64,000 nucleotides of DNA from Ascidiella aspersa (Eukaryota), in NCBI GenBank assembly GCA_963924565.1, contig OZ004612.1, positions 8,866,001-8,930,000 of the forward strand, read 5' to 3'. The notes under the pieces were generated by a model. That model was not told the DNA's origin. It ran no database searches and saw nothing but the letters and a program-made list of their open reading frames with translations. This document shows, piece after piece, positions 11,700 through 63,289 of this stretch; the stretch's first letter is position 1; each line of letters opens with the position of its first letter. The position numbers and the translations under genes were made by a program.

Positions 11700-11836
11700 A
11701 AAATTGCCACAAGGTCGTTCACGTTTTGCCGCGCCTCGCCTCTAATTGAGCGCCTTGATGAGCGCTTGCCTGGTGAGAAGGCAGGACGACAATGACCGCG
11801 CTGGTCCCTCATTTGTGGCCCTACTGACGCACGCTG
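11700..11836 (+). repeat. Duplicated ~137-bp element, copy 1 (compound hairpin), ~1.58 kb upstream of the unit A TATA
   Basis: Near-identical to 30877-31013; the flanks are not alignable. Confidence 0.9.
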
Positions 11837-13281: not shown

Positions 13282-13316
13282 TATAAAAGCGCGCGCAGCG
13301 ACAGACTTCCTCATAA
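13282..13316 (+). promoter_or_regulatory. TATA box + initiator, unit A
   Basis: TATAAAAG at 13282 and TCATAA with A at 13313 (31 nt downstream). The same geometry recurs in the paralogs. Confidence 0.7.
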
Positions 13317-13384
13317 CTGCTCTGCCGCCGCTACGCGTATGGTTGTCAGCCTTACTGCTGCTGTTTTACCGAAAGCAAGTCAAC

Positions 13385-13465
13385 ATGGAAGTACATTCAA
13401 CTCTAAAGCATATTGCAAAAGGCAAGAGAGATGTGACTCTCCACAAGCAAGTGAAATACAAGTGA
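13385..13465 (+). CDS. Putative micropeptide/uORF MEVHSTLKHIAKGKRDVTLHKQVKYK* (26 aa)
   Basis: Kozak AACATGG; ends AAA TAC AAG TGA as in the paralogs. A weaker-context upstream ATG exists at 13339 in another frame. Confidence 0.45.
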   Translation: MEVHSTLKHIAKGKRDVTLHKQVKYK

Positions 13466-13571
13466 CCAGATCGCCTTTTTGTGTGGATTACTTTCCATTA
13501 TGAGATGATTCAATGTGACTGGAATTGAGTTACGAGGTCGACATTGACAAGGAGACTGTATTCAACTTCAG

Positions 13572-13824
13572 CGGGGTCAACGTACACCGAAGTACGGACG
13601 ATTTCGAGATACAATCAGGGATTGCCTAAACGCATGAGGTTTATCTCGAAACAGGCTCAAGCCAGGATCGGGCGCCTTCACCCAAAAAGGCCGGGATTCG
13701 AGCGAGCCTGCCACCGCCAGCAAGTTGTCAACGAAGCAGTCTACAGTTGAACTTGACCAGTTCTGCAACAGCAAAGTCTCCGGGATTCAAGCACTTGATG
13801 AGAGACATCACAGCTTTGCAGAAC
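13572..13824 (+). ncRNA. Conserved structured core, copy A
   Basis: 6 differences in 253 nt versus copy E by manual alignment; four hairpins. Confidence 0.6.
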
Positions 13825-16800
13825 ACACAAGTCAACGTTACAGGAATAAAGAGGATACCATCTTCTACAATCACCGCCTTGAATGAGAAAAGGGGGATTC
13901 AAAACAGTGCCAATGTGCATTGGACAATGGCCATTCAAAGAATGTGCCAACTTCGCAGAAACCAAGTTTCTGAGGTTTTGCCACGTTTCAACAACAATGT
14001 TGGTGGAATGAGCGTTGTTACGCATTTCTATATTGTATAAAAATATGTTATTCGTGTACTTAAGTGTATTTCGTGAACGACCTCGCTGTACATGTTGCCC
14101 ACACATGATTTTGTTTCGTTTTTGCCTTTTTACATTTCACAATATTTTTGCAATTAAAGAAAAATTGACCAAAAACACAAGTTTTCGTTTATCGAGTTTG
14201 AGCTGTTAAGAGTAGTACTTCCAAATAGGCAGGTTCAGTTCATACAAAACAGGTTTTTATAATATATTTCTGTCTTTTATAGGCGATAGAAAGTAAAAAT
14301 ATAACAGGTAACAACTTTATCAAAAGTATTTCACTTAATTGGTTTAGAAAAGAGTTGCCTGGTAACGGATGTTATGAAATGTTCAATTAGCTAGCAACCA
14401 TATTCCAAATTTTGTGTTTTATTGTCTAGTTAAGAGCACAACTTCAAATTAGGTATCGACCTGTAATTTGCCACTTAATAAGCTCCATCATTCAAATTAC
14501 AGGCTTTAAAATAATTGATTGACAACTGGCATTGACGTAGGCTGGGGTTATTAGAGCGTGACCGTATTCCGGCGTTTTGTTTAGGGTTAAACATCCTTGT
14601 TTGAATCCAGTGCTTGAGTTGTACAGGTGCCTAGAAATAAAGCTGAATGGCTTGAAATTTAGCTTATCGTACACCATAATGTACAGTTGTACACCAACTT
14701 ATAATAGGGTATATTAGACATGACGTTTAATTACTGCGAACTGTTAAAATGTAGATTTTGCGCAAGGTACGTTCGGCACCATTTTAACAGGCGAATCAAT
14801 TAAGAGTGCACAAAAGTCGTTGATAGTTCTCGGTAAACGAGATATTTAACACTATGCCGAAACTGATTTTACCTCTGGATTGAGCAATATTCGATTCCTT
14901 GTTAGTTATCGGTTCTTTTCCTCCATATAGGAAAGTTAAAAAATATGAAAAAAGAAAAAAGGCAAAAATAAGTAAACAAATTGTGCTTTAGATTGAAAGG
15001 AACAAGAAAAGAGAGTTAAGACACACTTTTGCTTTTCTATTAATTATTAGTTGAACTATTAATTAATTAAGATTTATATTTATTGATAAAGCATATTATT
15101 CTTAGGATTTACCCCACGTTTGTATAATTCATACTGCCGTATTCGTCTTTGTCCATATGATAGTAATTTTGTTTTCATTTTTCGAGTTTTGGCCACTATA
15201 TTTGTAAAACGAACCGAAATTTTATTAATTTAAGACCCTTCCTATAATTTCCTTTTATTAGAGCCTTGAATTTTCCCATGTAATGTGTTTCAACCTTGTT
15301 CACTTGATAAAAGCTCTTTGCGTGAAAGAACTGAAGCACCTAAAGGTGGCCGAAATAGTAAGTGCGAACAGAGCAATAGACGTAGCTTTGAAATTTTGCC
15401 AGTAATTCGAGAGCGCTTTTAGGCGGCCGCGGCGGCAGCGATCGCGTTTTAAGTCGACGAACGTGACCCAGAGAAAGGATAGAAATCTCGCGTCTGGGCC
15501 CGCCGGAAAATTGCGTTTGCGGCGGCGCTGAAGGCAGCAGCAAAATCAGCGCCCGGAAGCTTAAGACGGAAGAGGTTGCCTGCAGAAACAACACCCGAGG
15601 CGCGTCGCGCTGCCAGCCGGCAATTGTGGCTCAAAAAATAAACGCGTCGGTGCAAATTGGCCAGCAAAATGCACCGGACTCGGCAGTCAAAATGCAACCC
15701 ACAGTACGGACCGCATTCGGTACGGTTAGCGCTTTTGTAGAATGCCGTTCTCATCAGACCGAATTGATCCGAAAGTAGCTGGCCGTTTATCGTAATTAAC
15801 GCTCGTGTTTATGCCTGACCAGGACGCTTCTCACCACGCTACAATTGGATTAGAAACGGTGTATTGACCGCGCGCGTAACTGTGTCAACTGTGTATGCTA
15901 ATTTCGATGGGCGATTTCCTTCCACGCGGCTTGATACTCCAGACAGCGTTCCCACATGGAAATTTGCACCACGACGCAGCTGCCGAGTGTTACGCAAGCA
16001 ACCCAGCAAACCGCTTTGTTTATGTGTTAATTTGACTTGCAGTTTTTTTATGTGCTCTGCTTTTCAGTTGATATTTCAATTGTTGCCTATTCTAAACTGA
16101 GTGTTTCATCACAGAACCATCTGTTTGTTAACTGATGCTATCGTAAACGACTCATTAGGGCGTGTTGTTGTTGTTCGACTTGTTTATCACCTTATGGCTG
16201 TCGGAGTGGGCTGCAGCAGTGCGGCAATATGCTAATGAGACACATATGTGCATAGATCGAGCCTAATGTATGCAAATAATCGCGCCACGGAGCATTTTAG
16301 TTGGTGATCGAGCCTTTTAAGTTCTTAACTTTGATGGAGAAAAATGTCAAACATGTTAAAGTCTGCTTTTCGAAACTTGTTTGGTGATACGTGTCTTGGC
16401 AACGTCTTTGCAATCAACCATATTAAGCTGTAGAGAAACTGAAGATTTGTGGCCCAAAAACAAATAAAATGACTCTAGCCTAGTTGGGCTTCCTATAAAG
16501 GTATAGGTACTGTTGAAGGTTTTTGTATAGGCTACAATGAATTGTGGCTCAAAGTCACGTTGACTTTCAAGATCTTGGCCAAACGGATTCGTGCCGTCTT
16601 AGGACTTTCGTGAGAAATTTCAACACACGCTTATAAGTATCAAGAACAAACCAAACATCTCATCGTTACTTAACACCACTCCGTTAATTTAAAAACGCTG
16701 GCTCGTCAACTTAAGTAGTGGTCTTACGCACGAAGCAGTTAAAATCACTTGACTTTCGAAATACAAGTAACATTTTTCCGTGACTGGCTCAAAACTGCTG

Positions 16801-18099: not shown

Positions 18100-19750
18100 A
18101 AAACAAAATATACATTTGACGTTAATCGTTGACAGCCCTAAGTTAAGCAATGCTATGCATGTTGAAATGTGTTTACCACTGTAACGCAGCCTAAAAACTC
18201 TCTGTTCGTAAGTCGGGTAAAGGTCAGACTCCGCTTGTCGCTTTGAATGTTTTTTCGTCGTGTATTTGTAGTATCGGTACTCGACCGGTGTCAATACAAA
18301 ACAATTGTTTACCTTGAAATGAAAATTTCATAAAAATCTTTTATAACAGTTAAAATTTCAACTTAGCCATGTAACGCCAAGGCAGATTTGGATGTGCTTG
18401 TTAAAATGTAATGACCACTGTAACGCAGCCTAAAAACGCCCAGTTCCTAACTCGGTTAAAGGTCAGACTCCACTTGTCGCCTTATGATGTTTTTTCGCCA
18501 TGTATTTCGCCGCACGAACACAAAAGAACGCCTTATTGATTTTGCCGAACCCTCTTTCCCTTAACGTTGTCTTACGTTCTGGTCACGCGCTCTACGACCA
18601 GCGTGAACCATGTCGAACACGCCACTTGGAAATTTAAAGAATTAACCTGTGCGTCAGTGGCAGAATACACGCTAGTCAGTTACATATAGGGATCGGTAAG
18701 GCGTACGTGTATCGTCATTATGAGAACGGCAAGAGCATACTTTTCAAATTATGTCATGGCGTTCCTGTGTCGTTTTGCATCGCAACGTTTAAAGCGAAAT
18801 TACGTTTTCTGTCGTTGACGTTTTTAACGCATTGTACAATGTTAGGTTTTCACACTCTTAATTATATGCCGATAATATTAGATCAGAGCTGATACACGAT
18901 GCCAGATTGTAGTATCGGTACTTGACCGGTAACAATCCAAAAAGAAAACAACAAAGTTATTTGAGTATATTGGCCACTTATTATGATCCAAAGCAACGTT
19001 TTCTACCTTTATATGAAAATTTCACAAAAAGTCTTTTATTAACAGTTAAAATTTCAACTTAGCTGTGTAACGCCAAGGCAGATTTGGATGTGCTTGTTGA
19101 AAAGTGATGACCAAAGTAACGCAGCCTAAAAACGCCCTGCCCATAAGTCGGTTAAAGGTCAGACTGCACTTGTCGCTTTGAATGTTTTTTCGCCATGTAT
19201 TTCACCGCAAAAGAACGCCTTATTGACTTTGCCGAACCCTCTTTCCCTTAACGTTGTCTTACGTTCTGGTCACGCGCTCTACGACCAGCGTGGTCCATGT
19301 CGAACACGCCACTTGGAAATTTAAAGAAGTAACCTGTGCGTCAGTGGTGGAATACACGCTAGTCAGTTATATATACGGATCGCTAAGACGTACGTGTATC
19401 GTCATTATGAGAACGGCATGCGCATACTTTTTAAATTATGTCATGGCGTTCCTGTGTCGTTTTGCATCGCAACGTTTAAAGCGAAATTACGTTTTCTGGC
19501 GTTGACGTTTTGAGCGCGTTGTACGATGTTGGGTTTCTACACTCTTAACTATATGTCTTATAATATTGATTTGGAGCTAATACCCGATGCCAAATTGCAG
19601 TATCGGCACTCATCCGGTGCCAATCGAAATAATACCACTTAGGATCCTATACTCCACGTTTTCTACCATTAAACGGAAATTGATCAAAAATTCTTAAATT
19701 TATTGTTTAAATTATAAGTTAGCTGTGTAACGCCAATGCAAATTTTGGCT
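18100..19750. repeat. Tandem duplication, ~640-690-bp unit (2 full + 2 partial)
   Basis: Unit anchor gYagtatcgg at 18268, 18909 and 19597; long near-identical stretches, e.g. 18547-18850 versus 19234-19540. Confidence 0.9.
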
Positions 19751-22245: not shown

Positions 22246-22464
22246 AAAAAGATGCAAATTTAAATGGGAGGCAATCGCTTTTAAATAGATTCTAACAGCT
22301 ATAATTCGTTGCTTTATTGGACGCGGCAAGCAGATGTTTCCACTCCCGTGCCACAAATGTTTTTTAAAGTGGTCTTCTATAAGCGGGGACAAACAGGCAC
22401 CCTGGTACCCTTTGGATTGGCCTAGTGAACTGCAAAGCCCTTCAGAGAACTTGTTGATTTTTCA

Positions 22465-22615
22465 GAACCTCTTTCCCTTAACGTCGTCTCACGTTCTAGT
22501 CACGCGCTTTTTGAGCAAGCGTGGGCCATGTCGAACACGCCGCCAAACTATTTCAAAATCTTTAACCTGTGCGTCAGTCGAGGAATGTGCACCGGTCAGT
22601 TACTTATACGGACCG
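22465..22615 (+). repeat. Diverged copy of the core of the 18.1-19.7 kb tandem unit
   Basis: Aligns with 18547-18695 and 19234-19381 (ctctttcccttaacgt...ccatgtcgaacacgcc...taacctgtgcgtcagt). Confidence 0.85.
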
Positions 22616-23049: not shown

Positions 23050-23947
23050 CTGATGGTCATAACATTGACTCTGAATGCAAACGGTGTAATCGATTATGTG
23101 ACATTTGTTAATCGACACGAATAAATATGTATTTTTCTGAAATATCACAAGTCACATTTACAAAGCAGATTTAGTTGTTTAACGAATTACAGTTCTACTG
23201 TTTTTGTGTTTTGGAATTTTATCTATATCTATATCTGTAAAGTTACCATATTTTTTTCTGCAGAAGACTACATGCCAATCGAAACGTCGGCGGCATTAAT
23301 ACACGTTTAATCAGAAAAAAAAAACATTTTTAATTGACAAAACAATCTTATTTTCTCCCAAATATACTTCTAGATGAGTGTCTTTTTTTACGTTGCAATT
23401 CCAACCGCATCAATGAAGTGTTATCTTCGTTGTGTTCGTTGCAAATGTCGTCGTTTGTTGTTTTGTGATGTGATGTCTCTCATCAAGTGCTCGAATCCTA
23501 GAGACTATTCCTGAAAAATTCGACACAACGGGCAGCTTTTGTGATCACTTTCTGGCGGTGGCAGGCTCGTTCGAATCCCGGCCTTGTTTGGATAAAAGCG
23601 ACCGATCCTGACTTGAGCCTGTTTCGAGATAAACCTCATGCGTTTAAGCAATCCCTGAATTTATCTGAAAATCGTTTGTATATCCACATACGTTGACCCC
23701 GCTAGAAATGTGGTGTCGCTATAAGGATTTGTCCCTTCTTCTATTGAAAGGTCACAAGGTTCTTCTGCATCTGAATATGCGACCAAGTTGTCCTTTTGAT
23801 CACAAGTCACTTTTCCACATTTAAATGTGGTATTTATCAAGTTGTGTCCGGGCCAACCCTAAATGTAGCTCTAGCGAAAACGATTTCAGCCTATCGCTTC
23901 GCAATTAGCGTTTAGACAAAGAAAACAGTCGTGTGGTCTCTTATATA
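23050..23947 (-). other. Paralogous transcription unit B (most diverged; no intact KYK ORF)
   Basis: TATATAAG at 23947 on -, AAAAGTGA remnant at ~23810, TTTCTAG then diverged core at 23701-23470, AU-rich tail. Confidence 0.6.
23470..23701 (-). ncRNA. Conserved structured core, copy B (diverged)
   Basis: A ~45-nt stretch is identical to E; hairpins are retained with wobble and compensatory changes. Confidence 0.55.
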
Positions 23948-30876: not shown

Positions 30877-31013
30877 AAAATTGCCACAAGGTCGTTCACG
30901 ATTTTGCCGCGCCTCGCCTCTAATTGAGCGCCTTGATGAGCGCTTGCTTGGTGAGAAGGCAGGACGACAATGACCGCGCTGGGCTTTCATTTGAGGGCTT
31001 CTGACGCACGCTG
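30877..31013 (+). repeat. Duplicated ~137-bp element, copy 2, ~1.59 kb upstream of the unit C TATA
   Basis: Near-identical to 11700-11836. Confidence 0.9.
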
Positions 31014-32468: not shown

Positions 32469-32503
32469 TATATAAACGAACGCCCAGCCGTTAATGGTCA
32501 CTT
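32469..32503 (+). promoter_or_regulatory. TATA box + initiator, unit C
   Basis: TATATAAA at 32469; Inr TCACTT with A at 32500. Confidence 0.75.
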
Positions 32504-32557
32504 TACGTTTTGTCTCTGCTGGTTTCACGCGCGCAAACGGATTTATTACAACCGACG

Positions 32558-32629
32558 ATGGAAGCGCGAATGAAATCGCACTGCAGCAAGATGCTGACGG
32601 GAAACGTCAAGCGAGAAAAGTACAAGTGA
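32558..32629 (+). CDS. Putative micropeptide/uORF MEARMKSHCSKMLTGNVKREKYK* (23 aa)
   Basis: First ATG after the predicted TSS, Kozak ACGATGG, ends AAG TAC AAG TGA. Confidence 0.5.
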   Translation: MEARMKSHCSKMLTGNVKREKYK

Positions 32630-32747
32630 TCAAAATGAAGCAATCATCCTTGAATGGATTATTCTCTACTACTGATGAAGCAATGTCCAGTGAGCATTGA
32701 ACCAATATGCTTGGTTCGTTGGTCGGAAGACTGTCTACAACTTTCAG

Positions 32748-33000
32748 CGGGGTCAACGTATACCCAAATACGGACGATTTCGAGATACAACCAGGGATTG
32801 CTTAAACGCATGAGGTTTATATCGAAACAGGCTCAAGCCAGGATCGGGCGCCTTCACCCAAAAAGGCCGGAATTCTAGCGAGCCTGCCACCGCCAGCAAG
32901 TTGTCAACGAAGCAGTCTACAGTTGAACTTGACCAGTTCTGCAACAGCAAAGTCTCGGGGATTCAAGCACTTGATGAGAGACACCACAGCTTTGCAAAAC
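32748..33000 (+). ncRNA. Conserved structured core, copy C
   Basis: 5 differences in 253 nt versus copy E by manual alignment. Confidence 0.6.
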
Positions 33001-34134
33001 ATCCAAGTCAACTTCTAAGAACAAACGACGAAAAGTACAACTGCCCACTCAGCCAACGTGAGCTGACTAATGGGCGCAAGTTGTAAAGAAAACGTTCTAC
33101 AACATGGGTTAGCGTTTCCGCTGCCTTTGTATTTCCAGCGATGCCTGCTCTTACCTACTCGATATCTCTAAGGAGAAATTGAGTGTTTATGTATATATAC
33201 TACATTGTTATTACTTATTAGTTTGGCGCAACACTGTGTCTTATGCTTTTTGCCAATTTATCGTGTCGTTATTTTGTAACGCGTTGATCATGTGTTTCTT
33301 TGACATGTTATTTTTCGAAACAAGGTTACAAAATGAATTCAATCTTTTCTGATTTATGAAACAGATTTAGGAAAAAAGTTAGAAATGTAAAACAAGACAG
33401 GAAAGCAGTTATTCGGTATTATGACAAGAAAAATGCAAAACAAAAAAATCTTTGGTAACCATATAGGTTCAGTAACAAATCGGTTACTTCATTGAACAAA
33501 ATATATAGTCTAAAATACAATTTAGTGTTTGAAATATATCGAGGTCAATTAAACAGACAGATATTTTTTTTTTGTTCTCAGCCTCTAGAATTCCGCGGTC
33601 AAAATTGTGCTTTTTGAGTGCGGGGGTGTTGTGGCAAAAACTAACGGGCTCTACTATAAAAGGACACAAAAACGTAAGGGCACTTATACCTGTTGTAGCG
33701 CCCGTGTGGGCCGAGCCAATAAAGGGAAAGATTTGATGTGTCATACATATTTCCAAGGCATGTCAGTATCACATCAGGGATATGTGACAGGGCCTAAATC
33801 AATTCACAGACCAAAGGGTTTGGTGCGCGCCTTTTGACAGGTTGGGCCTGCCTGTAATTTTGGCCGATACCGTTTGAGGTTTGGCGCTTCCGAATGGCTT
33901 TCATCTCGATAGTATATCTGTGATCGACAAATTGTCTCTTTCGTGGACATAATGGCACAGGCCAATTGCAACACATTGGCGACTGACAGTTGACGGTTTG
34001 ATGTGTTGATTTAACCGCCTTCTAAAACTTTCTAAAATCTTGCTTGAAAGGCTGGTCACAATCAGTTTATGTTTTTGGGAATGCGGAAGGCAATATAATC
34101 GAATTTTATGTATACCATTTTAATTCGTTTAAAA

Positions 34135-41648: not shown

Positions 41649-44017
41649 GAGGCACCCACGTTGGTTGATCTGATTGCGAGCGATTTTGCGAATTTAAACG
41701 TGACACTTAAAAACAAAGAACGTGAGTGGTTTACCAGGGTTCCAAGGTTGCATAGCGTGCTGTGCGGAACACGTGTTATCAACAGCCGTTAACAGGTGGT
41801 CAAAGAAGGGTGCTGTCATACTTTAAAAAACTATAGCACAGATTTCATGAAAATTTGACATAGATGCCACCGTTTTACAACCCTATTACGTGGCCATGTT
41901 GGCCTGTCTTATATTGTCGACGATTTCCTCTTAATTGCAGTTTTATCGTTTTTAAGTGTTATCCAAACGTTACAAAAACAAATTATTTTGTCAGTTTTAT
42001 GTGACCTAAATACTCTCGCAACTGTGAGAACTGCGTTTAACACAGCCAAACCACGTCGAGGTATATGGCGATTTTTCAATCCAAGATTTCTTATTTTGTA
42101 GGCAAGGTGATTTACCCGACAATTGCCAGCTTCAACAGGTTACACCCAGACGACGTAGGCGAATATGTTGCTGTTCAAACGCAGAACGGGCTTGTGAAGA
42201 AGTGCGACAGGCATTTTCTTTGCGTCCCAGGCGAGCGATTTCAAAGCTGAACTGAACTTGGGGTCACTCGACCTCACGGCGGTACATCAGACGCGGTTTT
42301 CACGAGAACACTCGGGCACGCCGCGCTTTGATATAACTCGTATCTTTATACTGCTGTCGCCAAACTCGTTTTTATTAATAAAATGTGTTTTCTTCATTAA
42401 CATATAGAACTGTGGGCTGCTAAACTAAGACGCCAACGACGAAAAAGAAAGAAAAGGTTGACAAATAAAGGCCAAGAGAAAGAAACGATTGAAAATTAAA
42501 GGCCTTGGTTTTAAATAGTCCATCCGTTGCCCATTCCGGTTTAGCTTTTGATCAATACCGTTATACAAAAGCCGGATGCACTCATTTAGACTTGTGATGC
42601 ATTGCCGGATTACTGAAAGGTCACCAGAATTGATGGTGGTTAAATTTAGCGCGAAACAATGGCGCTTTTAATTGCCTGACAAATGATGTCTGGCGTTATA
42701 TAACTGTTTTTTTTTTATTAATTAAAAACAACCGCCACTGACTAACAAGGTGGCAATTTTAGGAAAGGCAAAGAAAGCAGTCGCCATACAGTATCATAAT
42801 GCCATTTATTTTTACTTTCCAATAGATTTATTTATACTTTAATCCGTGGAGCTTCGCACCTTACACCTGCACAAGCTTAAAACACATCCAGCGCCAGTCG
42901 TTGACATTTCAAACGGAAGGCGTCACGGTCTGCCGATTACAGTCGAATTCGTCAAACGACAAGACAGCTTCCAATTTGCGCGGGACAAAGTTCAATCGCA
43001 AAGCTGCACCGGGCAAAATTGCACGTCTTAAAGGTGCGTAAGTCATAATAAAGCTTCCGCCTGTCCGCTCGTACAGACGCCTTAAGTTCAGGCCGATGTT
43101 TGACCGTCTTGTAGCCTAATAACCACCTTCAGCATGTTTCCAGGCACCGACGTTAGTAAGTTGTAACCATCAACCCGGAGCCGTAAAGGCAATTACAGTG
43201 GCGCCAGCTAATAGCCCAACCAGCGCGCCTAATTGCAGCATCCGTCAGCGATCGTGGCCAGTTTTGCACCTCGGTCAAGCTGCTGCTTTGCCTGACAAAT
43301 GGCGAATCGAGCGCCGGGAAAACGTGTTCGCCGTGGCTCGTTTTTACGTAAGGGGAAGTGCTTCTTGCGTGGCACGCGTTCGCCGTTTACGCCCACTCTA
43401 CAAACAAACAAGAACGATTGTCCACCGATGACCATACTAAGACGCGAGCTTTGTTTGGGCGAGTTGGTTTATTGACGATGTCTGACGTAAAGCAAAGGGC
43501 GATCGTGAAAGTTGACAAGGAAGCCTGTCAACGAAGGACGAGCGAAGTGGCAAAAACAAGAAAGGCGCTGAAACAAAGAAGCGCAAATGTGCAATGCGAA
43601 GGAAAAATAAACTTGAGGTGGAATTTAATGCATTTACTTGCAAAATAAAACGCGCAACTTAGCGGAGGCCAACAAAGAAATAAAACACAAAATGTGACAT
43701 CCTTTGGGAGACACAGAGCTTGGTCGACGATGTCAGTTCACTTGAAGCTATATAGTTGAGGTCGTCTGATATGCGGAATACTCGGCGATTCATCACAGTG
43801 TAGAACTGGCTTTTTGAAAGAAAACAAAACTTTAAGTAAAAAAATTGAAATAAATGCATAATATTTAAGCCACTACATTTTATCATTGTTAATTCCGCGT
43901 AACCTAATTACAAAATATTAGTTAAATACATTTTTATCATGTTATACACCTTTAGACCAAACCAAATAAAGCGTTAATTACCTTAAAACTCTCTTTTTTG
44001 AGCATATAGAGACATCG

Positions 44018-44399
44018 TTGACCTGTATGTTTTGCAAAGCTGTGGTGTCTCTCATCCAGTGCTTGAATCCTCGAGACTTTGAAGAACTTTTCCTTTACAA
44101 CTTGCATCCAGTCGTCAGCTCACGTTGGCTGAGTGGGCAGTTGTACATTTTCGTCGTTTATTCTTTGAAGTTGACTTGTATGTTTTGCAAAGCTGTGGTG
44201 TCTCTCATCAAGTGCGTGAATCCCAGAGACTTTGCTGTTGCAGAACTGGTGAAGTTCAACTGTAGACTGCGTCTTGACAACTTGCTGGCGGTGGCAGGCT
44301 TGCTCGAGGCTTGAGCCTGTTTCGAGATAAACCTCATGCGTTTAAGCAATCCCTGATTGTATCTCGAAATCGTCCGTACTTTGATATACGCCGACCCCG
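44018..44399 (-). ncRNA. Conserved structured core, copy D
   Basis: Core homology; the tip of hairpin 2 is deleted and part of hairpin 4 is duplicated at ~44018-44080. Confidence 0.55.
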
Positions 44400-44500
44400 C
44401 TGAAAGTCGTCCACAATCATTCTCTTAAATGTAAATTTTAGAAACGCGTTAAAGCCGCCGCTTTCTTCATGTGGTATATTGGAAAATGATTCACATAATG

Positions 44501-44581
44501 TCACTTATACTTTGCTTGTAAAGTTTTACCCCGTGCGGGTCCTGAATGTAGGTCCGCACACATTGTTTGACAGGGTACCAT
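44501..44581 (-). CDS. Putative micropeptide/uORF MVPCQTMCADLHSGPARGKTLQAKYK* (26 aa)
   Basis: First ATG after the predicted TSS, Kozak AAGATGG, ends AAG TAT AAG TGA. Confidence 0.5.
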   Translation of the reverse strand: MVPCQTMCADLHSGPARGKTLQAKYK

Positions 44582-45287
44582 CTTAACACACGGGGCCACG
44601 TGCGTCGAATCGACAAAGCGGATGTGAACGCGGCAGCCCAAAGTCGTGCTTTTATATAGGGCGAGCCTATAGCAACCGCAGACGGGCAGCTCAAAACAAA
44701 GCAACATATCGTCGCCCTTTCGACAGCGAGGCCCTACCACCGGTGGGATTTCCACAACTTTTCCGGACGAAGAGTTGAGGTTTGACAGCCGGTTTTCGGT
44801 TTGGAAAACGTCGCGATGAAAGTGGTTGAAGTAAGATATCGAATTCTTCGGTGTTTTGCACTTAGACGTTCACTGTTATTGGTACGTTACAATTTTGAAA
44901 ATCTCTACCATGTTTTGATGTTTTATCCTATTTATTCCACGTGTCAGACCTGGGTAAACCTTTCAGAATTATTGTTGCCAATAGCAACCAAGTAATTGTT
45001 TTTCGGGTAAACAAAGCTTTTTTGAGCTACAGTGAAAATCTGGTATGAGGTTAACTTTAAGTCACCAGCTCAATTATTGTAACTAATCGCACAAAATATA
45101 CCTTAGTTCATAATATTTTAGTTGATTAAAATTGAATTGGTCACCAGCACTAGTTCATCCTATATATTGTCTGGTGTCGAGGTAGACGTGCTAAAAAGTA
45201 AATAACCATTTTTACTGCAAGATTATATAACGACGCATAGCAGGTTGTTTGCTTACGCTTATGTAACAATCCAAGTTTTATGTACAG

Positions 45288-52455: not shown

Positions 52456-55400
52456 GAATAGACAAAGCATTTCGTCACGATTTTTGAACAATGGCGGACG
52501 GCCTGTCTATTGTAAAGCAGTCAAAGCACATACAATCAAAAACAAAAGTTGGACAGGGTATGTTTCACCAAATTTAGAGCGTCGCTAAAACAAAAGCCTT
52601 TCGCGTCTGTTCCGTGATGTTTGTAGATCGCAAACGCATCTATAGGTATTCTAGTCGTGCCAATATTTATAGCATGCCATAGGCATCTAAGCAGTACTCT
52701 ATGTCCGTATACTGGAGGACGTCGGTTTAATAGGCAGACGTCCAATCAACAGTCGAGTCACGAAGCTGCCTTGACGACCTATACAGTCTCGAGCCTTTAG
52801 ACAGCGCCCATATATTGTGCTGTGAACCACGGTGTATCACTGCATACGCCTTACGTGAACGTCTGGACTTCATACGCCGCATTTAGACACAGTCATACCG
52901 GTCGGCCCCAAAAGTAAAAGTGGTAATAGTTTTCCACGTCAAAGGGCGAACTGCGACGAACCCCGATATTGCCCTTTGCCCCACAAGACGAAGGGTGACT
53001 GTACGTTCTATTCCAATCCATGCAGAGTTGTGATTTCACTTGCGCGCCGCTGAATAATGAATGTCCTACGTACACTCGTCTAGTCGACGTAAAAACAGGT
53101 AACCTTCTATAACCCACAGAATTATTTTACCTTGATTCAAGTTTTACTATGTGAATTGTTACGAGGCCAACTGATTGATGCCATCTGTTAAAAATTACAA
53201 AGTTCGCTTTTATATCTTTTTGGCCAATATATCGCTTTTACATTTTTTATTTAGTTTATATTTTGCTTGGGTTCTCTTTTACGCACTACAGAAAATGATA
53301 TTTTGTAAGGAGATAAATATTACTATTTGGTAACTCACAACGTCCTAATTCAAACTTGAATTTACTTAAAAAAAGGTCGCATAATACTCAGTGGGCACCA
53401 GGCCTTTTTTCCAATGTTATACATGCTGCTCTCATAATTGAATTAATTAATTTAGCTGCACGATTCACTCTTTTTCATTAAATATATGTGACTTTTAAAC
53501 ACAACAAATACTTATCTGATCAGCTCTAGTATAGCGCACGTGTTAAGCGAAGGTCAAATTAATTCTTTGGGATTCAATAGCATTCCAGTAGGGCAAAGAC
53601 GTCACGCGCATTAACTAAATTGCCACGCTTTTGTGTAAAAAATGCCACGGATCATCTACAATCGGTCACATTTGATGACCGCGCGTGTGTGCATGTAATG
53701 TAGCGTTGCGGAATGCTCAACGGTTGGCGTAAATACGTGACACCGGTCCCAATGGTATGACGTCGATACGACGGTATACGTTAGCATTGGTATTTACCGA
53801 CCCTACCGTGCACCAACCACAGAACGAATACACTTTTTAATTATACAGGAGCCAATAAACGATAACATGTTTACGCTGAGCCAAAAATGCCGCACGCCGC
53901 GAAGCTTTTAGGTGGTCAAAAATAAAAAGCGTCGAATAGATTCAGCCTACGTACGCGGCAATCGATTTGACCGAAATAAGTGTACGGCGCGACCCCTGGC
54001 AAATTGAAGCGACCTGAAAATTTCGATCAGATTAATAACTGCACTAAGTAATTCGATAGGGAAGGCATTTCTCCTAGAGTAAAAAATCCCGGCACCGTGT
54101 GGTATTTTATTGTTATATAATGTTAGTTTAATGAACATCATTTGCCCATTTTATGACTATTCATTTGTTTTGCGTCATTGTGATTAAATAAACCGAATTA
54201 TTTTTTTTTAAAGTTGAATTATTATTTACAGATTCTTTTCTCAAACAATTGTTTTTAAAAAGCTTTAATTTAAAGTCTACAGTCTACTGTGCGGATTGCG
54301 CCATCCCAAAAATACGATCACTTTCCCCTTATTATAAAACAAGTGCGATTTCATAGTCTCTAATGTTTTAGCAAATTTCTACAAGTTGACAGGATACACT
54401 CAGTATAGCCTTGGAAACCGTTCGGTGATTGTTTGTTTATTTTCGCCGCGGCGCCTATTCCTACGTAGTAAGCGGGAACAAAAAGCGCCCCAACAAATCG
54501 CCGTTTATTTGCGCCCGGAATCGACTGGTTATTTAGCGCTCAGGCTGACGCGCGGCAAATTTCGCGACGAAATTAATCATAAAAAAAACGACGACGGGGC
54601 AAACTTTCGCCGCGCGTACCCCAGGCGCTGCGAAAGGCTCGAGGGGCACCGCTGTCAATCGCGCAGGCCTCGCAGGGGCCGTGACGTAGGTGGTCGGCGG
54701 CGTGACGTCAAGGGTCGCGTGGCGGCGTGTTCGATTGATAAGCGGGCCGGCTTAGGGCGAGCGCTGTTGGCTGGCTTGCTGTGACGACCGCCGGGACTGT
54801 GTTGAAGAAAACACTGGGAAAGCGTGCGCGACGAATGCCGAAAGGAAAAGCGGCACCTGCGTTTGCCAAATGCCGCGAGATAAAGCGAACCCGGAACTAC
54901 GCAGATAAAAAAAGATCTGGCTTTGAATGTAAATCGGCCGGCACCCTTTTTCTACTTGTTTACCGGCTTTTTACCCAATCCCAATGGCCACTTCAAGGCC
55001 TGCTTGTACAGTTCCAAGCTCTCTTTCTTTCATCGCCTGTTAAAACGGCCATAGAGACCAGCCAAAGGCCTCGATACGCGTTTTGACGGGTTTGGCGTCA
55101 GCACAATAAGCTGACGACTGACGGGTGACGTGGAAACAACATGTTTTCTAGTCGCCGGTTTCGCAAGTTTGCGCGTTTGCTGCAGGCTTGGCATTTTCAC
55201 TTTCGCTTGCCATGTAGAAGTGTTGCTGCAAGTCACGGCAGAAGAAAACATTTAGCACTTTAAAGCCCTGTTTTTTTTTGTCGCGTAGATTTCATTACGG
55301 AAGGAAAACTATCGCCATTTCTAATAAATGATTCACGTAGCCGTAATCCTAATTCAAGATCCCCTGTTTTCCCTAATGAACAATGTGTTGTCTTTGGGTG

Positions 55401-56617
55401 GTGTTCTGGTGCCTTTGACGCTTTGGGAATTTACGCACTATCGCGCGAAAAATCACTTAGGCTGCTTGTTTACTTTCCAAGTTAGAAAATTCGCATAAAT
55501 TCCTGCACAATAACACTTTCGACGAAAAGCGTGCCCCTTATTCGAAAAACAAAACAAAGCAAAGCAAATGTGTAATCAAGATAACTTGGAAGTGAGTTTA
55601 TTTCAAGAAACAACCTCTTTTACAATTAATCGTACATTATATTTATCATCGGAAACATATTTTATAACTTAAAAGCTTGTTAGCGTATATACGGAGCACG
55701 TACCCACTTAACGAGATTTAAACCTAAATAACGCTAAATATAAATATAAATGGCCTATCTTTTTAAACCAGGCTGTTTTCGACGATTATTTTTGCGAACG
55801 GTCTAAGTCGCCAACAGTGTGTCAAATACGTTCATTGTGAGCCGTGCAGCCCATACGCAGTAGTAGGCCCTAATGTGCTTGCTGTGCATTAAACTGGGGT
55901 TAAGGCGGGTTTACCTAACTAAGAATACGCGGATAATTTCCGCACTCCGCTATTGAAATGTTCTGCCCAAAACTTCAAAGTACTGCGTGTGCACCCAGTT
56001 GAACCAGAACCACGGCACGCTAATTGCGTTAATATTAAAATCATGAACCGGCGTCAACCGACCGATTCCTTACATTTTTACTGGGATAATATTACCGGAA
56101 CCTTTGATGAAACGTTGCCGGAAAATGGCATTTGGCCCAACCTTTTGAATGTATCATAAAGCTTGATAGCTTGCGTGCGTACTTTAATTTACCAGGTAGT
56201 CTATATCCAGGGCATTTCCTAGGTAGGCCTAATCGGCATGTATCGGTCATCCAGTTCCACATTAAAACTTTCCAGTGCATTTTTGATACTGCGAAATGGG
56301 CAACTTTCCCCAAAATTGTCGCCGGAGCAAATATTGTGCGCAGAAGTCACAAGTTTTTGGCCGGCTGTAAATCTGGCGGAAATTTACCGTTGATTTACTG
56401 GAGACTTTCTGCTGTACTGAAGCCTAGCAGCTAGTAAGGCTAGACGGCGTCACGTGCCTGAAAAGCCCCGTCTCGTTCTGTTTTTCTCTTTGCGTTGCGC
56501 ATCGAAGAGCTGGCCATATATAAGCCCGCGCACAGCGCCAGTTCGGTTATACAGCTCTTGTTGCTGCTGCTACGTGTACGTACGCCGAATATGTTTTTGT
56601 ATGTTCAGCGTCCAATT

Positions 56618-56692
56618 ATGGATTTACCGACAATATGTTTTGTTGCCGCGGGATGCAACGAAATTCAAGCTTCCAAGCAAAAGTACAAGTGA
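56618..56692 (+). CDS. Putative micropeptide/uORF MDLPTICFVAAGCNEIQASKQKYK* (24 aa; an in-frame ATG at 56591 gives 33 aa)
   Basis: Kozak ATTATGG; ends AAG TAC AAG TGA. Confidence 0.5.
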   Translation: MDLPTICFVAAGCNEIQASKQKYK

Positions 56693-56795
56693 CGAACTGC
56701 GCTAACGCAATGGATTAATAACTATCCTGAGAAGAAACGTTTTTCATAGAAGATAATCTTCTGAAGTTCATAACGGGACTGTCGACGACTTTCAG

Positions 56796-57048
56796 CGGGG
56801 TCAACGTATACCCAAATACGGACGATTTCGAGATACAATCAGGGATTGCTTAAACGCATGAGGTTTATCTCGAAACAGGCTCAAGCCAGGATCGGGCGCC
56901 TTCACCCAAAAAGGCCGGGATTCGAGCGAGCCTGCCACCGCCAGCAAGTTGTCAACGAAGCAGTCTACAGTTGAACTTGACCAGTTCTGCAACAGCAAAG
57001 TCTCGGGGATTCAAGCACTTGATGAGAGACACCACAGCTTTGCAGAAC
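56796..57048 (+). ncRNA. Conserved structured core, copy E
   Basis: H1 56826-35/56866-75 (10 WC bp); H2 56876-82/56928-34; H3 56945-56979; H4 56984-92/57040-48 (9 WC bp). Confidence 0.6.
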
Positions 57049-57687
57049 GCATGAGTCAATTTCAAAGAACAAACGACGAAAAGTACAACTGCCCAAACTC
57101 AGCCAATGTGAGCTGACGACTGGATGCCAGTTGTAAAGGAAAAGTCTATCATACCAAAGCTACAGCAGATTCATTGCGAATTCTGCCTTGATGAACAAGT
57201 CGCAGCACCTTACCTGCGACCATCAAAGCTTGTTGCCTAGATGTGCTCTTCATTTTATATATTTATTTATTACCATTTTCCAAATGGTTCTTCGTTTGTT
57301 GTATTTTTCGTGCTGTGACAATTGTGCCATGTAATTGAAAGTTTGTGTCGTGTTTTGCTATTTTATTAAAAAAAACATCTAAGCAAAGTTGATTGTGTCC
57401 GCGTGTTTGGTCGACAGTACAACGTAGGCTAGGGCTAGAAAGCTTAGCACAGCAGTGAGCGCTGTTGTGCGTAGGCCTGTGACTTTCCAATTAGTCACCC
57501 CATAACTCGTTTTAGAAAGGGCCTAGTGCTAATTATAAACAACAATAACGGTTTCGAGCGTGTCTATGATATTCAGCTGCAAAGGACACAGCGGGGAATT
57601 TTGAAACAGTTTCAATTAGGGTCAATGCGCAGCATTTATAGAATTAGGTTTTTAAAACGAACGGAATTGTGACAGTATAGTGTACAT

Positions 57688-57945
57688 CAGTGGTTCTCAT
57701 TCCGGGCCGAGAGATTTTTGAGAATCTTTAGGAATCTGATTTTTGCTCAACCTTTAGAACTTTTTGTGTAAATTACAGCTGACTAAATCCAATTGTAAAT
57801 TCCTACGTTGTGTAGAGGCAATGTGTACAGTTCTGTTTATTGTGACATACTAGCGAATTGCTTACGGAAAATTTTTGTAGGGGAGTCGCAAGCCATTTAT
57901 TATTTCTGAAGGGTGCCGCTAGCGATAAAAGGCTGCGAAGCACTG
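57688..57945. mobile_element. hAT (Charlie-like) MITE, same family as 62986-63289
   Basis: CAGTGGTTCTCA left end, CACTG right end, TSD gtgtacat/gtgtacac, internal homology to the 63 kb copy. Confidence 0.85.
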
Positions 57946-59582
57946 GTGTACACTTTTCGAAGCAGCGCAATTAAATCTGAGAGCAGTTGCAAACCGAATA
58001 AATTTGCGGCAATAGGAAGAGCTGTAATTAGGCTCAGTTGACTGCAAGGTTAATTTGAGGGCTATGGCCGGCCGTGAAATCTAATTGCAGCCTCTCGAAA
58101 GCGATTTCACAAAATCACAGCCTCTGATACAATAGGAACGGCGCCGAAATCACCGGGTGGGTTAAACGGCGGCAAAACACTGAGGCGGAAATCGGCAAAG
58201 GGCTTCGACGAAATGCCCAATTTCGCCTTGGATTTCCGTAAACTACAGGGCTTGTAAGGAAACGCAGGCGGCAATCAAACAAGAGGCAGCAATTGTCGCT
58301 TGGACAAAGGCTGAAGTCGCCAGACCGTGACGCCTTCCGACAGAGATTAGAGGTTTTCGTTTTGTCTTGCTGCGAAAACCAAAATGACAATTTGTGTAGG
58401 TTGTTGTAGGAAGGACGCGCTTGTGATTTGCCAGCTTAAGAAATCCCGGCCTGCTGACAGTAATCGGCCAAACACTTCCTGCCTACCATGGTCAGGTTAC
58501 GGAAAGCTGGCATCCGTTTAATTGTGCGATTTGCATTACGGAAAACGCTACTTGGCAATGTCGGGCTCTCGACTCCCATGTTACTCGATAGCGCCGAAGG
58601 GAAGTTGCAGTGAGTTTCTCTCGTTCAGAGTTGCCGCCTCCCAAACCGGTGTTGACTCTGTTTGCGCGTGAATCATTACGTAGGAATACCAAACTCGCCG
58701 GCTTGGTTTGGTGGCTGTTTAAGTTCCAACGCCAAGGACCTGTCTCACCTCTGCGTATGACACATTCAGCGGTTTTGAAACCCCTTATTTGGCTTCGGCA
58801 ATTTTAGTTTAGTAAATTGGTGATATCTAGCGATGGCCATACACCTTTTTTCTGGTTCCACTTGAAAATCAGCCTTTGGTATTGTTACTTTTGCACCCGA
58901 TTTCAAACAGAGCTTGACCTATGAAAAGCAGTCGAACACGTTAGGGCGCTTTTTTAATGCTGTGTTTGCCTTATTATAATTTGGTTTAACTTTAACCTTG
59001 TCGAGCTACATTGCAGTCAGGCCACCGCCGGGCGATTCACGCTGCTAAATTAAGGCCTTAATCTTGTCGGTGGGCGTACAGCAGACGCAGGCAGCGCAAC
59101 TTCTCCAAGCGGCTTTCGGACGCAAAAATATCCATTCGACGCCGCTAAGCCCCGAGGCTTATTCGGCCGCATCAGATTTTCGCGCAAAATTAATCTCGAC
59201 GAACAGAAAAGCGCCGTTTGACGCAGGACAACAGAATGCTGCTTTTGGCCGCTAAACGCGTATCCCGGCTCCCGCGTTAGCTCGGAACCGGGAAATCGGC
59301 TATTTTTTGCCGCTGCAACTTTAAAAGTAGCGTCAGCAAAGCGTCACGAAACTGAATCACGAAGTTGGTCGCGAAGGGAGCGCAAATCGGAACTGGGAAG
59401 GAAACAGGTCGTTGTCCGACTTAGAATAGCTGTGTGTGTTTTCTTGCGCCTTGTCGTTTGGCCCTAGTAAGCCCAGACATTTGTGATTCAATCGGTTTTC
59501 CGGTCTTCGTCGCAAATTTGCATGAAACTTGTTGCGTGGCTTTTTCCCCGGGACACCGCTAATAATAATTCGCGACGGTAAA

Positions 59583-62985: not shown

Positions 62986-63289
62986 CAGTAGTTCTCAACT
63001 GGGGTGCCGCGGCACACTGGGGTGCCATTTCTAATGCTCAATGGTGCCGCGAGATATTTGAAAATCTTTAGGAATCGGATTTTTGATCAAGTCTTACAAC
63101 TTTTTTGTTATGATTAGAGTGAAATAAACCCAATTATAACTTCCTACGTTGTGTAGAGTTGATGTGTGGTGTTCCAGCTCGGTTTATGGTGACATTCTAG
63201 TAAATTACCGGAAAAATGTTGTAGGGGTGCCGCAAACTATTTGTTATTTCTGAGGGGTGCCGCTAGCTACAAAAGGTAGAGAAACACTG
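62986..63289. mobile_element. hAT (Charlie-like) MITE
   Basis: CAGTAGTTCTCAACT / AGGTAGAGAAACACTG, ggggtgccgc subterminal repeats, degenerate TSD ctttaaac/ccttaaat. Confidence 0.85.

What the first reader, a model, noticed from the sequence alone, without database searches (positions are those of the whole stretch)
56796..57048. The shared core is non-coding but folds into four hairpins with a compensatory change
Seen: 32 variable sites tallied by hand across the copies fall 11/10/11 over the three codon phases, and every + frame has stops. Hairpins: H1 TTTCGAGATA/TATCTCGAAA; H2 CAGGCTC/GAGCCTG with inner GGATC/GATTC and GCCTT/AAGGC; H3 CAAGT..TCAAC/GTTGA.ACTTG; H4 GTTCTGCAA/TTGCAGAAC + GTCTC/GAGAC + TCAA/TTGA. 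In diverged copy B, a GC/GC pair step in H2 becomes GT/AC, GCCTT becomes GCTTT (wobble), and H3 is rebuilt from different sequence (GATCACAA/TTGTGTC). Inference: a functional RNA element of unknown class. Gene conversion may also contribute to the ~98% identity.
Basis: partly seen in the sequence, partly recalled or inferred. Interest (0 to 1): 0.8.

Follow-up and report, generated by a model that had tools for sequence, protein, structure and literature searches.

The report
Conserved untranslated core of five short RNAs
This stretch is the best-kept, non-coding middle of a short, strongly expressed RNA that this sea squirt makes from five sister genes at one spot in its genome; the stretch probably acts as RNA, but its hairpin folds are not yet proven.

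Summary
The core has five copies (A-E). All lie in this window, 9-12 kb apart in alternating orientation, and none was found elsewhere in the 308-Mb genome.

RNA reads show that unit E is one unspliced + strand transcript of about 0.8 kb, 56567 to about 57343. It is very abundant in one library. The acceptor-like TTTCAG in front of the core is not spliced.

All five units have a TATA box 246-290 nt upstream of the core. Four have a 23-33-codon sORF that ends in a conserved KYK-stop about 100-120 nt before the core. The core therefore lies in a 3' untranslated region.

The core is non-coding:
- variable sites show no codon periodicity;
- copy C has a stop;
- copies B and D have frame-breaking indels.

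The hairpins exist and fold somewhat better than shuffles (z about -2.5). Covariation is not significant: 3 compensatory pairs against 1.2 expected, 26 of 500 shuffles.

Core identity is 94-98% among four copies while the flanks are nearly saturated, so gene conversion is a serious rival. No Rfam family and no orthologue was found.

This is a new lineage-specific sORF/lncRNA family. Interest is moderate.

The parts
56517..56523 (+). TATA box (TATATAA) of unit E, 279 nt before the core
   Evidence: A TATA box sits at -246 to -290 in all five units.
56567..57343 (+). RNA-supported body of the unit E transcript, unspliced. The true ends may lie a little outside this range.
   Evidence: X3 contigs tile 56567-57343 at depth about 3,900-6,750, against 0-2.8 in the other bins apart from the repeat at 57700-57899 (63.1). 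Adapter letters abut 56567. All X4 stranded reads within 56500-57499 have the first mate on the - strand.
56591..56692 (+). Small ORF of unit E: 33 codons, with an in-frame second ATG at 56618 that gives 24 codons. It ends in KYK-stop.
   Evidence: Translation is inferred, not shown.
56688..56795 (+). Spacer between the sORF stop and the core. A sister note proposed it as an intron (CAA|GTGAC...TTTCAG|C). It is retained in the bulk RNA.
   Evidence: X3 record 22 spans 56665-56846 at depth 4793. 13 X4 reads cover 56747. No joint was reported in the RNA runs.
56796..57060 (+). Shared non-coding core, copy E. The finding's 56796-57048 lies inside it.
56839..56885 (+). 47-nt island identical in E, D and the 80% copy B; A and C each differ from it at one position. 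It covers the H1 loop, the H1 3' arm and the H2 5' arm.
   Evidence: permutation P = 0.0008 for the E-B run
57061..57145 (+). 3' extension of the conserved block, shared by C, D and E only
   Evidence: z 17-29 for C-D, C-E, D-E; not significant with A or B
57365..57370 (+). ATTAAA polyadenylation-signal-like hexamer in front of an A run
   Evidence: RNA depth fades at about 57343, so use of this signal is inferred.
13282..13835 (+). Unit A: TATA 13282-13288, sORF 13385-13465, core 13572-13835
23469..23947 (-). Unit B, the most diverged: TATA 23941-23947, no KYK sORF, core 23469-23701
32469..33095 (+). Unit C: TATA 32469-32475, sORF 32558-32629, core and extension 32748-33095. Its own upstream flank appears in RNA reads.
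   Evidence: the loose end at 56777 (4 X4 reads) matches C's flank as seen.
44086..44658 (-). Unit D: TATA 44652-44658, sORF 44501-44581, core and extension 44086-44399, with a 34-nt deletion that removes the top of hairpin H2

Best explanation
The 253-nt stretch is the most conserved part of the 3' untranslated region of a short, intron-less, TATA-driven Pol II transcript, unit E (about 0.8 kb, + strand).

Unit E is one of five sister units (A-E) that exist only at this locus. Four units open with a 23-33-codon ORF that ends in a conserved Lys-Tyr-Lys-stop. The core begins about 100-120 nt after that stop and is not translated.

My reading is that the core is a cis-acting RNA module: a folded, protein-binding domain that sets the stability, localisation or translation of these small mRNAs. 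On this reading it is held by purifying selection, with gene conversion among the copies helping to keep it uniform.

**Shown:**
- the five copies and their common layout;
- transcription, strand, and absence of splicing in unit E;
- no coding signature in the core;
- patchy ultra-conservation.

**Inferred:**
- that the sORF is translated;
- that the hairpins form in the cell;
- the function itself.
For: **Copies.** There are five, all in this window, and none elsewhere in the 308-Mb genome by blastn or by a covariance model.

**Common layout.** TATA box at -246 to -290. In A, C, D and E a sORF has A at -3 and G at +4 and runs in frame to AAG TAC AAG TGA. The two changes seen in those KYK codons (AAA in A, TAT in D) are both synonymous.

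**RNA.**
- Stranded reads (X4) and very deep contigs (X3, depth about 3,900-6,750) lie only on 56567-57343. Elsewhere X3 depth is 0-2.8, except 63.1 over the repeat at 57700-57899.
- Orientation fits a + strand RNA.
- No joint was reported.
- Reads carrying copy C's own flank are also present.

**Non-coding.**
- Variable sites by phase: 16/23/19.
- The 38-codon ORF inside the core has a stop in C, a 1-nt insertion in B and a 34-nt deletion in D.

**Conservation contrast.** The core is 94-98% identical among A, C, D, E. The 5' transcribed flank is only weakly alignable (z 9.7, 17 and 4.1 for three pairs; the rest not significant), and the 3' flank is not alignable.

**Uneven constraint.** B shares a 47-nt run identical to E (P = 0.0008).

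**Folding.**
- z = -2.44 for the single sequence and -2.54 for the alignment, with 0 of 300 shuffles reaching it.
- Substitutions are fewer in the stems of E's + strand fold (18.6% against 29.9%, p = 0.046; circular shifts 9 of 252), but not in the - strand fold.
- In the small hairpin at 56805-56820 the loop varies at 5 of 6 positions. Its closing pair changes U-A to C-G in A and to U.G in D.
- D's 34-nt deletion removes only the top of H2 and leaves the basal stem.
Against: **Structure**
- Covariation is not significant: 3 compensatory pairs against 1.2 +- 0.8, reached by 26 of 500 shuffles.
- Of 26 departing stem cells, 15 break the pair. Wobble-making changes (7) are no commoner than C.A-making ones (8).
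- The opposite strand folds at least as well: z -2.26 and -2.97, with SCI 0.82 against 0.73 for the + strand.
- The outer stem of H4 is broken in B and weakened in C and D.

**Selection versus gene conversion**
- 97-98% identity across 250 nt next to saturated flanks is more uniform than purifying selection on a UTR usually gives.
- Core G+C is raised (0.47-0.52 against 0.27-0.35 in the 3' flank).
- Two informative sites group the copies differently: A+D at A2 column 29, A+E at column 259.
- All three points fit gene conversion.

**Gaps**
- No orthologue was available, so the covariation test has five paralogues only.
- Only unit E was laid with reads.
- Translation of the sORF is untested. 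The other two frames upstream of the stop are also often open.
Confidence: 0.5

Rival explanations
1. Concerted evolution only. The five units are old duplicates. The core is an island kept alike by repeated gene conversion, possibly GC-biased, with no function of its own beyond being part of the transcript.
For: - 94-98% identity in the core beside near-saturated flanks.
- Raised G+C in the core.
- Incompatible groupings at two informative sites.
- Variation among the four close copies piles up at the 5' edge of the block: 6 of 18 variable sites lie in the first 21 nt, as expected for an eroding tract edge.
- No significant covariation.
Against: - The 5' boundary is the same in all five copies, including B at 80%.
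- B keeps a 47-nt perfect island amid about 19% divergence, which would need a very short, recent tract.
- Substitutions are fewer in the stems of the + strand fold only.
- The transcript is strongly expressed.
Confidence: 0.25
2. Partly coding. The 108 nt in front of the core would be a regulated intron (CAA|GTGAC ... TTTCAG|C). When it is removed, the sORF would lose its last Lys-stop and gain a shared 20-residue tail (NGVNVYPNTDDFEIQSGIA in E), read from the first 57 nt of the core. The rest of the core would be 3' UTR.
For: - That frame is open to the same TAA in all five copies, with no indel, even in B.
- AA|GTGAC-like and YAG|C motifs are kept in the units.
- The phase fits in A, C, D and E.
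- The lead came from sister note s1-791349.
Against: - Bulk RNA keeps the stretch: the X3 contig 56665-56846 has depth 4793, 13 X4 reads cover 56747, depth does not dip, and no joint is reported.
- By the usual splice-donor consensus (recalled, not tested here) the donor is weak, lacking G at -1 and at +5.
- Changes in the 19 codons are mostly amino-acid-changing: for E against A, 3 of 4.
- They cluster in what is equally well a hairpin loop.
- B has no matching ORF.
- This reading would explain 57 nt only.
Confidence: 0.12
3. A free-standing structured RNA, such as a ribozyme, a snoRNA-like RNA or a small-RNA precursor, cut out of the host transcript.
For: - Hairpins fold better than shuffles.
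- A UGAUGA word sits in a conserved island.
Against: - Rfam at E up to 10 (unit E) and up to 1 (the other four units) gives no relevant family.
- RNA depth is even across the whole 0.8 kb. No site where many molecules begin or end was reported (table 6).
- A CUGA partner for a box C/D reading lies in the extension that A and B lack.
Confidence: 0.05
4. Relic of a mobile element or another selfish repeat.
For: - Internal inverted repeats.
- Both orientations occur.
Against: - Only five copies in 308 Mb, all at one locus.
- Each copy lies in the same orientation and at the same distance from a TATA box and a sORF.
- That pattern indicates unit duplication, not insertion.
Confidence: 0.03

Closest known systems
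Short mRNA-like transcripts that carry tiny ORFs (sORF / micropeptide 'lncRNAs'; insect tarsal-less/polished-rice is the classic case, recalled from memory and not checked here)
   Same: - A short Pol II transcript with an ORF of a few dozen codons at its 5' end, which standard annotation would call non-coding.
- None of the 8 ORFs I looked up is in the 15-billion-protein collection.
   Different: - The peptide is hardly conserved beyond its last three residues.
- A 250-350-nt untranslated block is nearly invariant.
- The family is a five-member cluster at a single locus.
3' UTR control and localisation elements of ascidian maternal postplasmic/PEM mRNAs (abstract start of PMC5927453 seen in the search listing; that their localisation elements lie in the 3' UTR is recalled, not checked here)
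   Same: A sea-squirt mRNA in which the functional information would lie in the 3' UTR RNA and not in the protein.
   Different: - No sequence comparison was possible.
- Those mRNAs encode ordinary proteins.
- Tissue, stage and localisation of the present RNAs are unknown.
Styela YC RNA, a polyadenylated maternal RNA with only a short ORF (recalled from memory; no paper read, no sequence available)
   Same: A tunicate polyadenylated RNA of about 1 kb, with a short ORF and a presumed RNA-level role.
   Different: - The species of this genome is not known to me.
- No sequence comparison was made.
- I do not recall YC RNA being described as a five-member family.
Multigene families homogenised by gene conversion (concerted evolution)
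   Same: High identity of one segment among clustered paralogues whose flanks have diverged. G+C is raised in that segment.
   Different: - The conserved tract is short, with the same 5' edge in all copies.
- Conservation inside it is patchy in the oldest copy.

Membership tests
Protein-coding exon | One frame open in all copies, indels in multiples of three, and substitutions concentrated at third positions | tested here: not met
   - Stops in all + frames.
- Variable sites by phase 16/23/19.
- 34-nt deletion in D, 1-nt insertion in B, a stop in C inside the only ATG-led ORF.
- Exception: the first 57 nt are open in one frame in all copies.
Spliced internal or terminal exon (cis- or SL trans-spliced) | Reads joined at the YAG|C acceptor at 56795/56796 | tested here: not met
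   - an RNA contig and reads run straight through.
- No joint is reported.
- The only loose end near the site is copy C's own flank.
- A minor spliced form is not excluded. Contigs drop rare variants, and X4 depth was about 10.
Any Rfam 15 family (hammerhead and other ribozymes, SECIS, snoRNAs, telomerase RNA and others) | A covariance-model match at or near the family's gathering score | tested here: not met
   - the best hits are 14-24 bits against thresholds of 37-80.
- Of these hits, only the weak SNORD10 match (14.5 bits against 37) overlaps the core; none names a ribozyme or SECIS family.
Selenoprotein mRNA (UGA plus SECIS) | A conserved reading frame beyond the UGA, and a SECIS element in the 3' UTR | tested here: not met
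   - The frame after the conserved TGA is not kept. C meets another stop after 2 codons, and the conserved TGGATT word sits in different phases (read).
- No SECIS hit.
Structured RNA with evolutionary support | Significant covariation in the proposed helices | tested here: inconclusive
   - 3 compensatory pairs against 1.2 +- 0.8, reached by 26 of 500 shuffles.
- 11 pair-keeping against 15 pair-breaking cells.
- Mild depletion of changes in stems, p = 0.046, on the + strand only.
- Only five paralogues were available.
Pol II transcription unit | Promoter element, strand-specific RNA with defined ends | tested here: met
   - TATA box in all five units.
- For unit E, RNA covers 56567 to about 57343 on one strand only.
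- ATTAAA at 57365.
- The poly(A) tail itself was not seen.
sORF / micropeptide mRNA | A small ORF conserved in position and frame, and evidence of translation | tested here: inconclusive
   - Position, start context, in-frame length differences and two synonymous changes in KYK fit in 4 of 5 units.
- Peptide bodies are unalike.
- The other frames are also often open.
- Translation cannot be tested with these tools.
Transposable element, SINE or MITE | Many dispersed copies with element-type ends | tested here: not met
   Five copies, one locus, fixed position within a repeated gene layout.

The most novel reading that the evidence does not exclude
The core is a new kind of folded RNA domain. 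It would consist of a closing helix that holds three hairpins, followed by a long bulged hairpin. It would give a shared RNA-level function (localisation, storage or translational control) to a family of small mRNAs whose peptides diversify freely. In that case the untranslated RNA, not the peptide, would be the conserved working part of the gene.
Probability: 0.2. Interest if true: 0.6.

Novelty: new member of a known kind. Interest (0 to 1): 0.38.

Why it matters
If the reading is right, this locus has several useful properties:
- It is a compact natural test case of a gene family in which selection acts on an untranslated RNA block while the tiny coding part drifts.
- It is an abundant sea-squirt RNA, judged by its depth in one library, and none of the 8 ORFs I looked up from units E and A is in the protein collection.
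- The five paralogues, which differ by 2-20% in the core and include a natural deletion of one hairpin top, form a ready-made mutant series for reporter assays.

Its reach is limited. The family occurs at one locus of one genome, no orthologue has been seen yet, and gene conversion may explain much of the identity.

Tried and rejected
**Ideas tried and rejected**
- Known RNA family: Rfam on unit E (E up to 10) and on the other four units (E up to 1) gave nothing relevant.
- Hammerhead-like reading of the UGAUGAG word: no hammerhead family among the Rfam hits listed, and the word differs from the hammerhead core as I recall it.
- Box C/D snoRNA reading (UGAUGA ... CUGA), judged by eye: the CUGA lies in the extension that A and B lack, and no terminal stem is present.
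- SECIS or selenoprotein reading of the conserved TGA: rejected, see the membership test.
- Splice acceptor or trans-splice acceptor at TTTCAG|C: not used in the bulk RNA.
- Mobile element: rejected on copy number and layout.
- Shared promoter motif: a scan of 500 nt upstream of each TATA with 22 textbook consensus words found nothing common to the units beyond the frequent RCGTG.

**Searches that came back blank**
- Further copies in the genome: a covariance model of the 5' domain found only the five. Note that only 150 of 23,477 first-look candidates were scored.
- Orthologues: a 22-letter pattern in metagenome contigs gave 0. A protein search with the 65-aa - strand ORF over the core found no candidate. 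An exact look-up found 0 of 8 ORFs in the collection.
- The genome tools here hold no other tunicate, so absence of orthologues is untested.
- Phage collection search: no match, and it was not a sensible place to look.
- Protein genes nearby: the 10 longest ORFs of the window have no Pfam domain, and a tblastx self-comparison showed no paralogous exons beside the units.
- Literature: two full-text searches. I saw only the listings and abstract starts, and none describes such a family. No paper was read. Supplements were not consulted.

**Limits of the read data**
- SNP counts (2 listed differences in 56299-57467, against 30 in the 2.7 kb before) hint at constraint. I do not rely on them, because 24 rows were not shown and DNA contigs are broken over the core.

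Full report
**What is there**

It is one copy of a block found five times in the window:

| Copy | Coordinates | Strand |
|---|---|---|
| A | 13572-13835 | + |
| B | 23469-23701 | - |
| C | 32748-33095 | + |
| D | 44086-44399 | - |
| E | 56796-57145 | + |

- The blastn E-values for the other four copies run from 1e-58 to 1e-160.
- The window belongs to a 308-Mb, 75-contig genome that earlier notes of this scan call a sea squirt.
- A DNA search of the whole genome, and a covariance model of the first 149 nt, both find these five copies and no others. The model search scored only 150 of 23,477 first-look candidates.
- The copies lie 9-12 kb apart in alternating orientation.

**It is a piece of a transcript, and the transcript is not spliced**

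I laid one stranded RNA-seq run (X4, raw reads, about 6% of the run read) and three contig sets on 53500-59499.

- X1 and X2 are flat at about 55-110x across almost all of the 6 kb, apart from a high-copy repeat at 57700-58099, and rise to about 175-250x over the core. They are therefore DNA runs, with the paralogues piled up on the core.
- X3 has depth 0-2.8 elsewhere in the 6 kb, apart from 63.1 over that repeat, but about 3,900-6,750 on contigs that tile 56567-57343 without a gap. It therefore behaves as an RNA library. This is my inference; its kind is not on record.
- Adapter letters abut 56567 in X3.
- X4 laid 44 reads. Within 56500-57499 the first mate is on the - strand in every bin, which for the usual stranded library means a + strand RNA. 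The only other depth is a trace on both strands over that repeat (57700-57899).
- No joint is reported in either RNA set.
- X3 record 22 runs from 56665 to 56846, straight through the acceptor-like TTTCAG|C at 56795/56796, and 13 X4 reads cover 56747.
- Four X4 reads end at 56777 in letters that match copy C's own upstream flank (compare). C is therefore also transcribed, and it too is unspliced there.

**The common layout of the five units**

- Each unit has TATATAA or TATAAAA 246-290 nt before the core.
- In A, C, D and E an ATG with A at -3 and G at +4 opens an ORF of 23-33 codons. It runs in frame to a conserved AAG TAC AAG TGA, 101-118 nt before the core.
- With a start like unit E's, it is the first ATG of the transcript in C, D and E, and the first or second in A.
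- The two changes seen in the KYK codons (AAA in A, TAT in D) are both synonymous.
- The ATG-to-TGA lengths differ by multiples of three.
- The peptide bodies are otherwise unalike.
- B has no such ORF.
- The other two frames upstream of the stop are also often open, so translation is a reasonable inference and not a result.
- On this layout the core lies in the 3' untranslated region.
- An ATTAAA at 57365 follows the point where RNA depth fades.

**The core is not coding**

- All + frames have stops.
- Variable sites fall 16/23/19 by phase over five copies and 6/5/7 over four copies.
- The only ATG-led ORF inside the core is 38 codons long in A and E. It has a stop in C, a 1-nt insertion in B and a 34-nt deletion in D.
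- One qualification comes from the lead in sister note s1-791349. In one frame the first 57 nt are open to a shared TAA in all five copies. A 108-nt intron (CAA|GTGAC...TTTCAG|C) would join the sORF to that frame.
- The RNA data show the stretch retained in bulk. By the usual donor consensus (recalled) the donor is weak. The changes there are mostly amino-acid-changing, and they fall in what is equally well the loop of a small hairpin.
- I keep this reading as a minor rival.

**Conservation**

- Core identity is E-C 98.0%, E-A 97.6%, C-A 95.7%, D 94-95% and B 79-81%.
- The 5' transcribed flank keeps only weak similarity (A-C z 9.7, C-E z 17, D-E z 4.1; the other pairs are not significant).
- The promoter is almost unalignable. 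The 3' flank beyond +360 is unalignable.
- C, D and E share a further 85 nt (57061-57145) that A and B lack.
- Inside the core the constraint is patchy. B differs from E at 45 of 241 aligned sites yet has a 47-nt identical run at 56839-56885 (permutation P = 0.0008).

**Folding**

They add a GC-rich closing helix and a small hairpin at 56805-56820.
- Energy is better than shuffles, but on both strands. Single-sequence z is -2.44 (+) and -2.26 (-). Alignment column-shuffle z is -2.54 (+, 0 of 300 shuffles reach it) and -2.97 (-, 3 of 300). SCI is 0.73 (+) and 0.82 (-).
- Covariation over the 77 pairs: 3 have a change on both sides, against 1.2 +- 0.8 in shuffles, reached by 26 of 500. The tool's own notes say such values arise without structure in related sequences.
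- Of the 26 stem cells that depart from the common pair, 3 are compensatory, 1 is a one-sided Watson-Crick change, 7 are wobble, 8 are C.A and 7 are other mismatches. There is thus no preference for the changes that keep a + strand pair.
- In favour of structure: substitutions are fewer in the stems of E's own + strand fold (18.6% against 29.9%, Fisher p = 0.046, circular shifts 9 of 252). They are not fewer in the - strand fold (23.1% against 22.7%).
- Also in favour: the small hairpin's loop varies at 5 of 6 positions while its closing pair changes U-A to C-G (A) or U.G (D). D's deletion removes just the top of H2.
- Taken together, a fold is plausible and weakly supported, but not demonstrated.

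**Selection or conversion**

- Identity of 97-98% next to saturated flanks fits gene conversion.
- So does the raised G+C of the core (0.47-0.52, against 0.27-0.35 in the 3' flank).
- So does the clustering of the close copies' differences at the 5' edge (6 of 18 in the first 21 nt).
- So do two sites that group the copies differently.
- Against conversion alone: the identical 5' edge in all five copies, the perfect island in B, and the strand-specific depletion of changes in stems.
- I think both processes act.

**Known families**

- Rfam gives nothing relevant for any of the five units.
- No orthologue could be sought properly, because the genome tools hold no other tunicate. A pattern scan of metagenome contigs gave 0. 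A protein search found no candidate.
- Two literature searches showed nothing specific. I saw only the listings and abstract starts.

**Verdict**

The core is a real, transcribed, non-coding, unusually conserved RNA segment. However, it is the 3' UTR core of a small mRNA-like family and not a free-standing RNA of a new class. Its hairpins lack significant covariation.
- This is a new, lineage-specific member of the sORF/lncRNA kind, of moderate interest.
- Orthologues plus R-scape, Ribo-seq and reporter assays would settle it.

Noticed in passing
window 11700-11836 and 30877-31013: A 137-nt module about 1.85 kb upstream of units A and C is 93% identical between them and occurs nowhere else in the genome. 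The 1.7 kb between module and core is unalignable (about 25% ungapped identity). Yet the spacing differs by only 2 nt, which I cannot explain. It is the subject of note s1-791187.
   Followed up: partly
window 57700-58099 (also 63046-63289): DNA depth jumps to about 3,700-4,400x in X1 and X2, against about 55-110x around it. A 78% similar copy lies at 63046-63289. This is a high-copy repeat just downstream of unit E, with only faint RNA depth.
   Followed up: no
window 44017-44081 and 44170-44234: Unit D carries a short internal duplication of the 3' half of hairpin H4, placed behind its 3' extension. One X2 DNA contig shows the same 'goes back 150' joint when laid on unit E.
   Followed up: partly
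window 18156-19745: A tandem repeat with a period of about 690 nt (83-86% identity between units) lies between units A and B. A weaker relative is at 22450-22615.
   Followed up: no
whole window: No ORF longer than 198 aa is present, and the ten longest have no Pfam domain. The five units alternate + - + - + at 9-12 kb spacing. The window looks like a protein-gene desert that holds this RNA family.
   Followed up: partly
window 57358-57375: In unit E a UUUUAU word directly abuts the ATTAAA hexamer and an A run. By recall this resembles a cytoplasmic polyadenylation element next to a poly(A) signal. This was not tested.
   Followed up: no
window 56299-57467: Only 2 differences between the runs and the reference are listed in this 1.17 kb (56634, 56747), against 30 in the 2.7 kb before it. 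This may reflect constraint on the whole transcript. However, 24 rows were not shown and DNA contigs are broken over the core.
   Followed up: no
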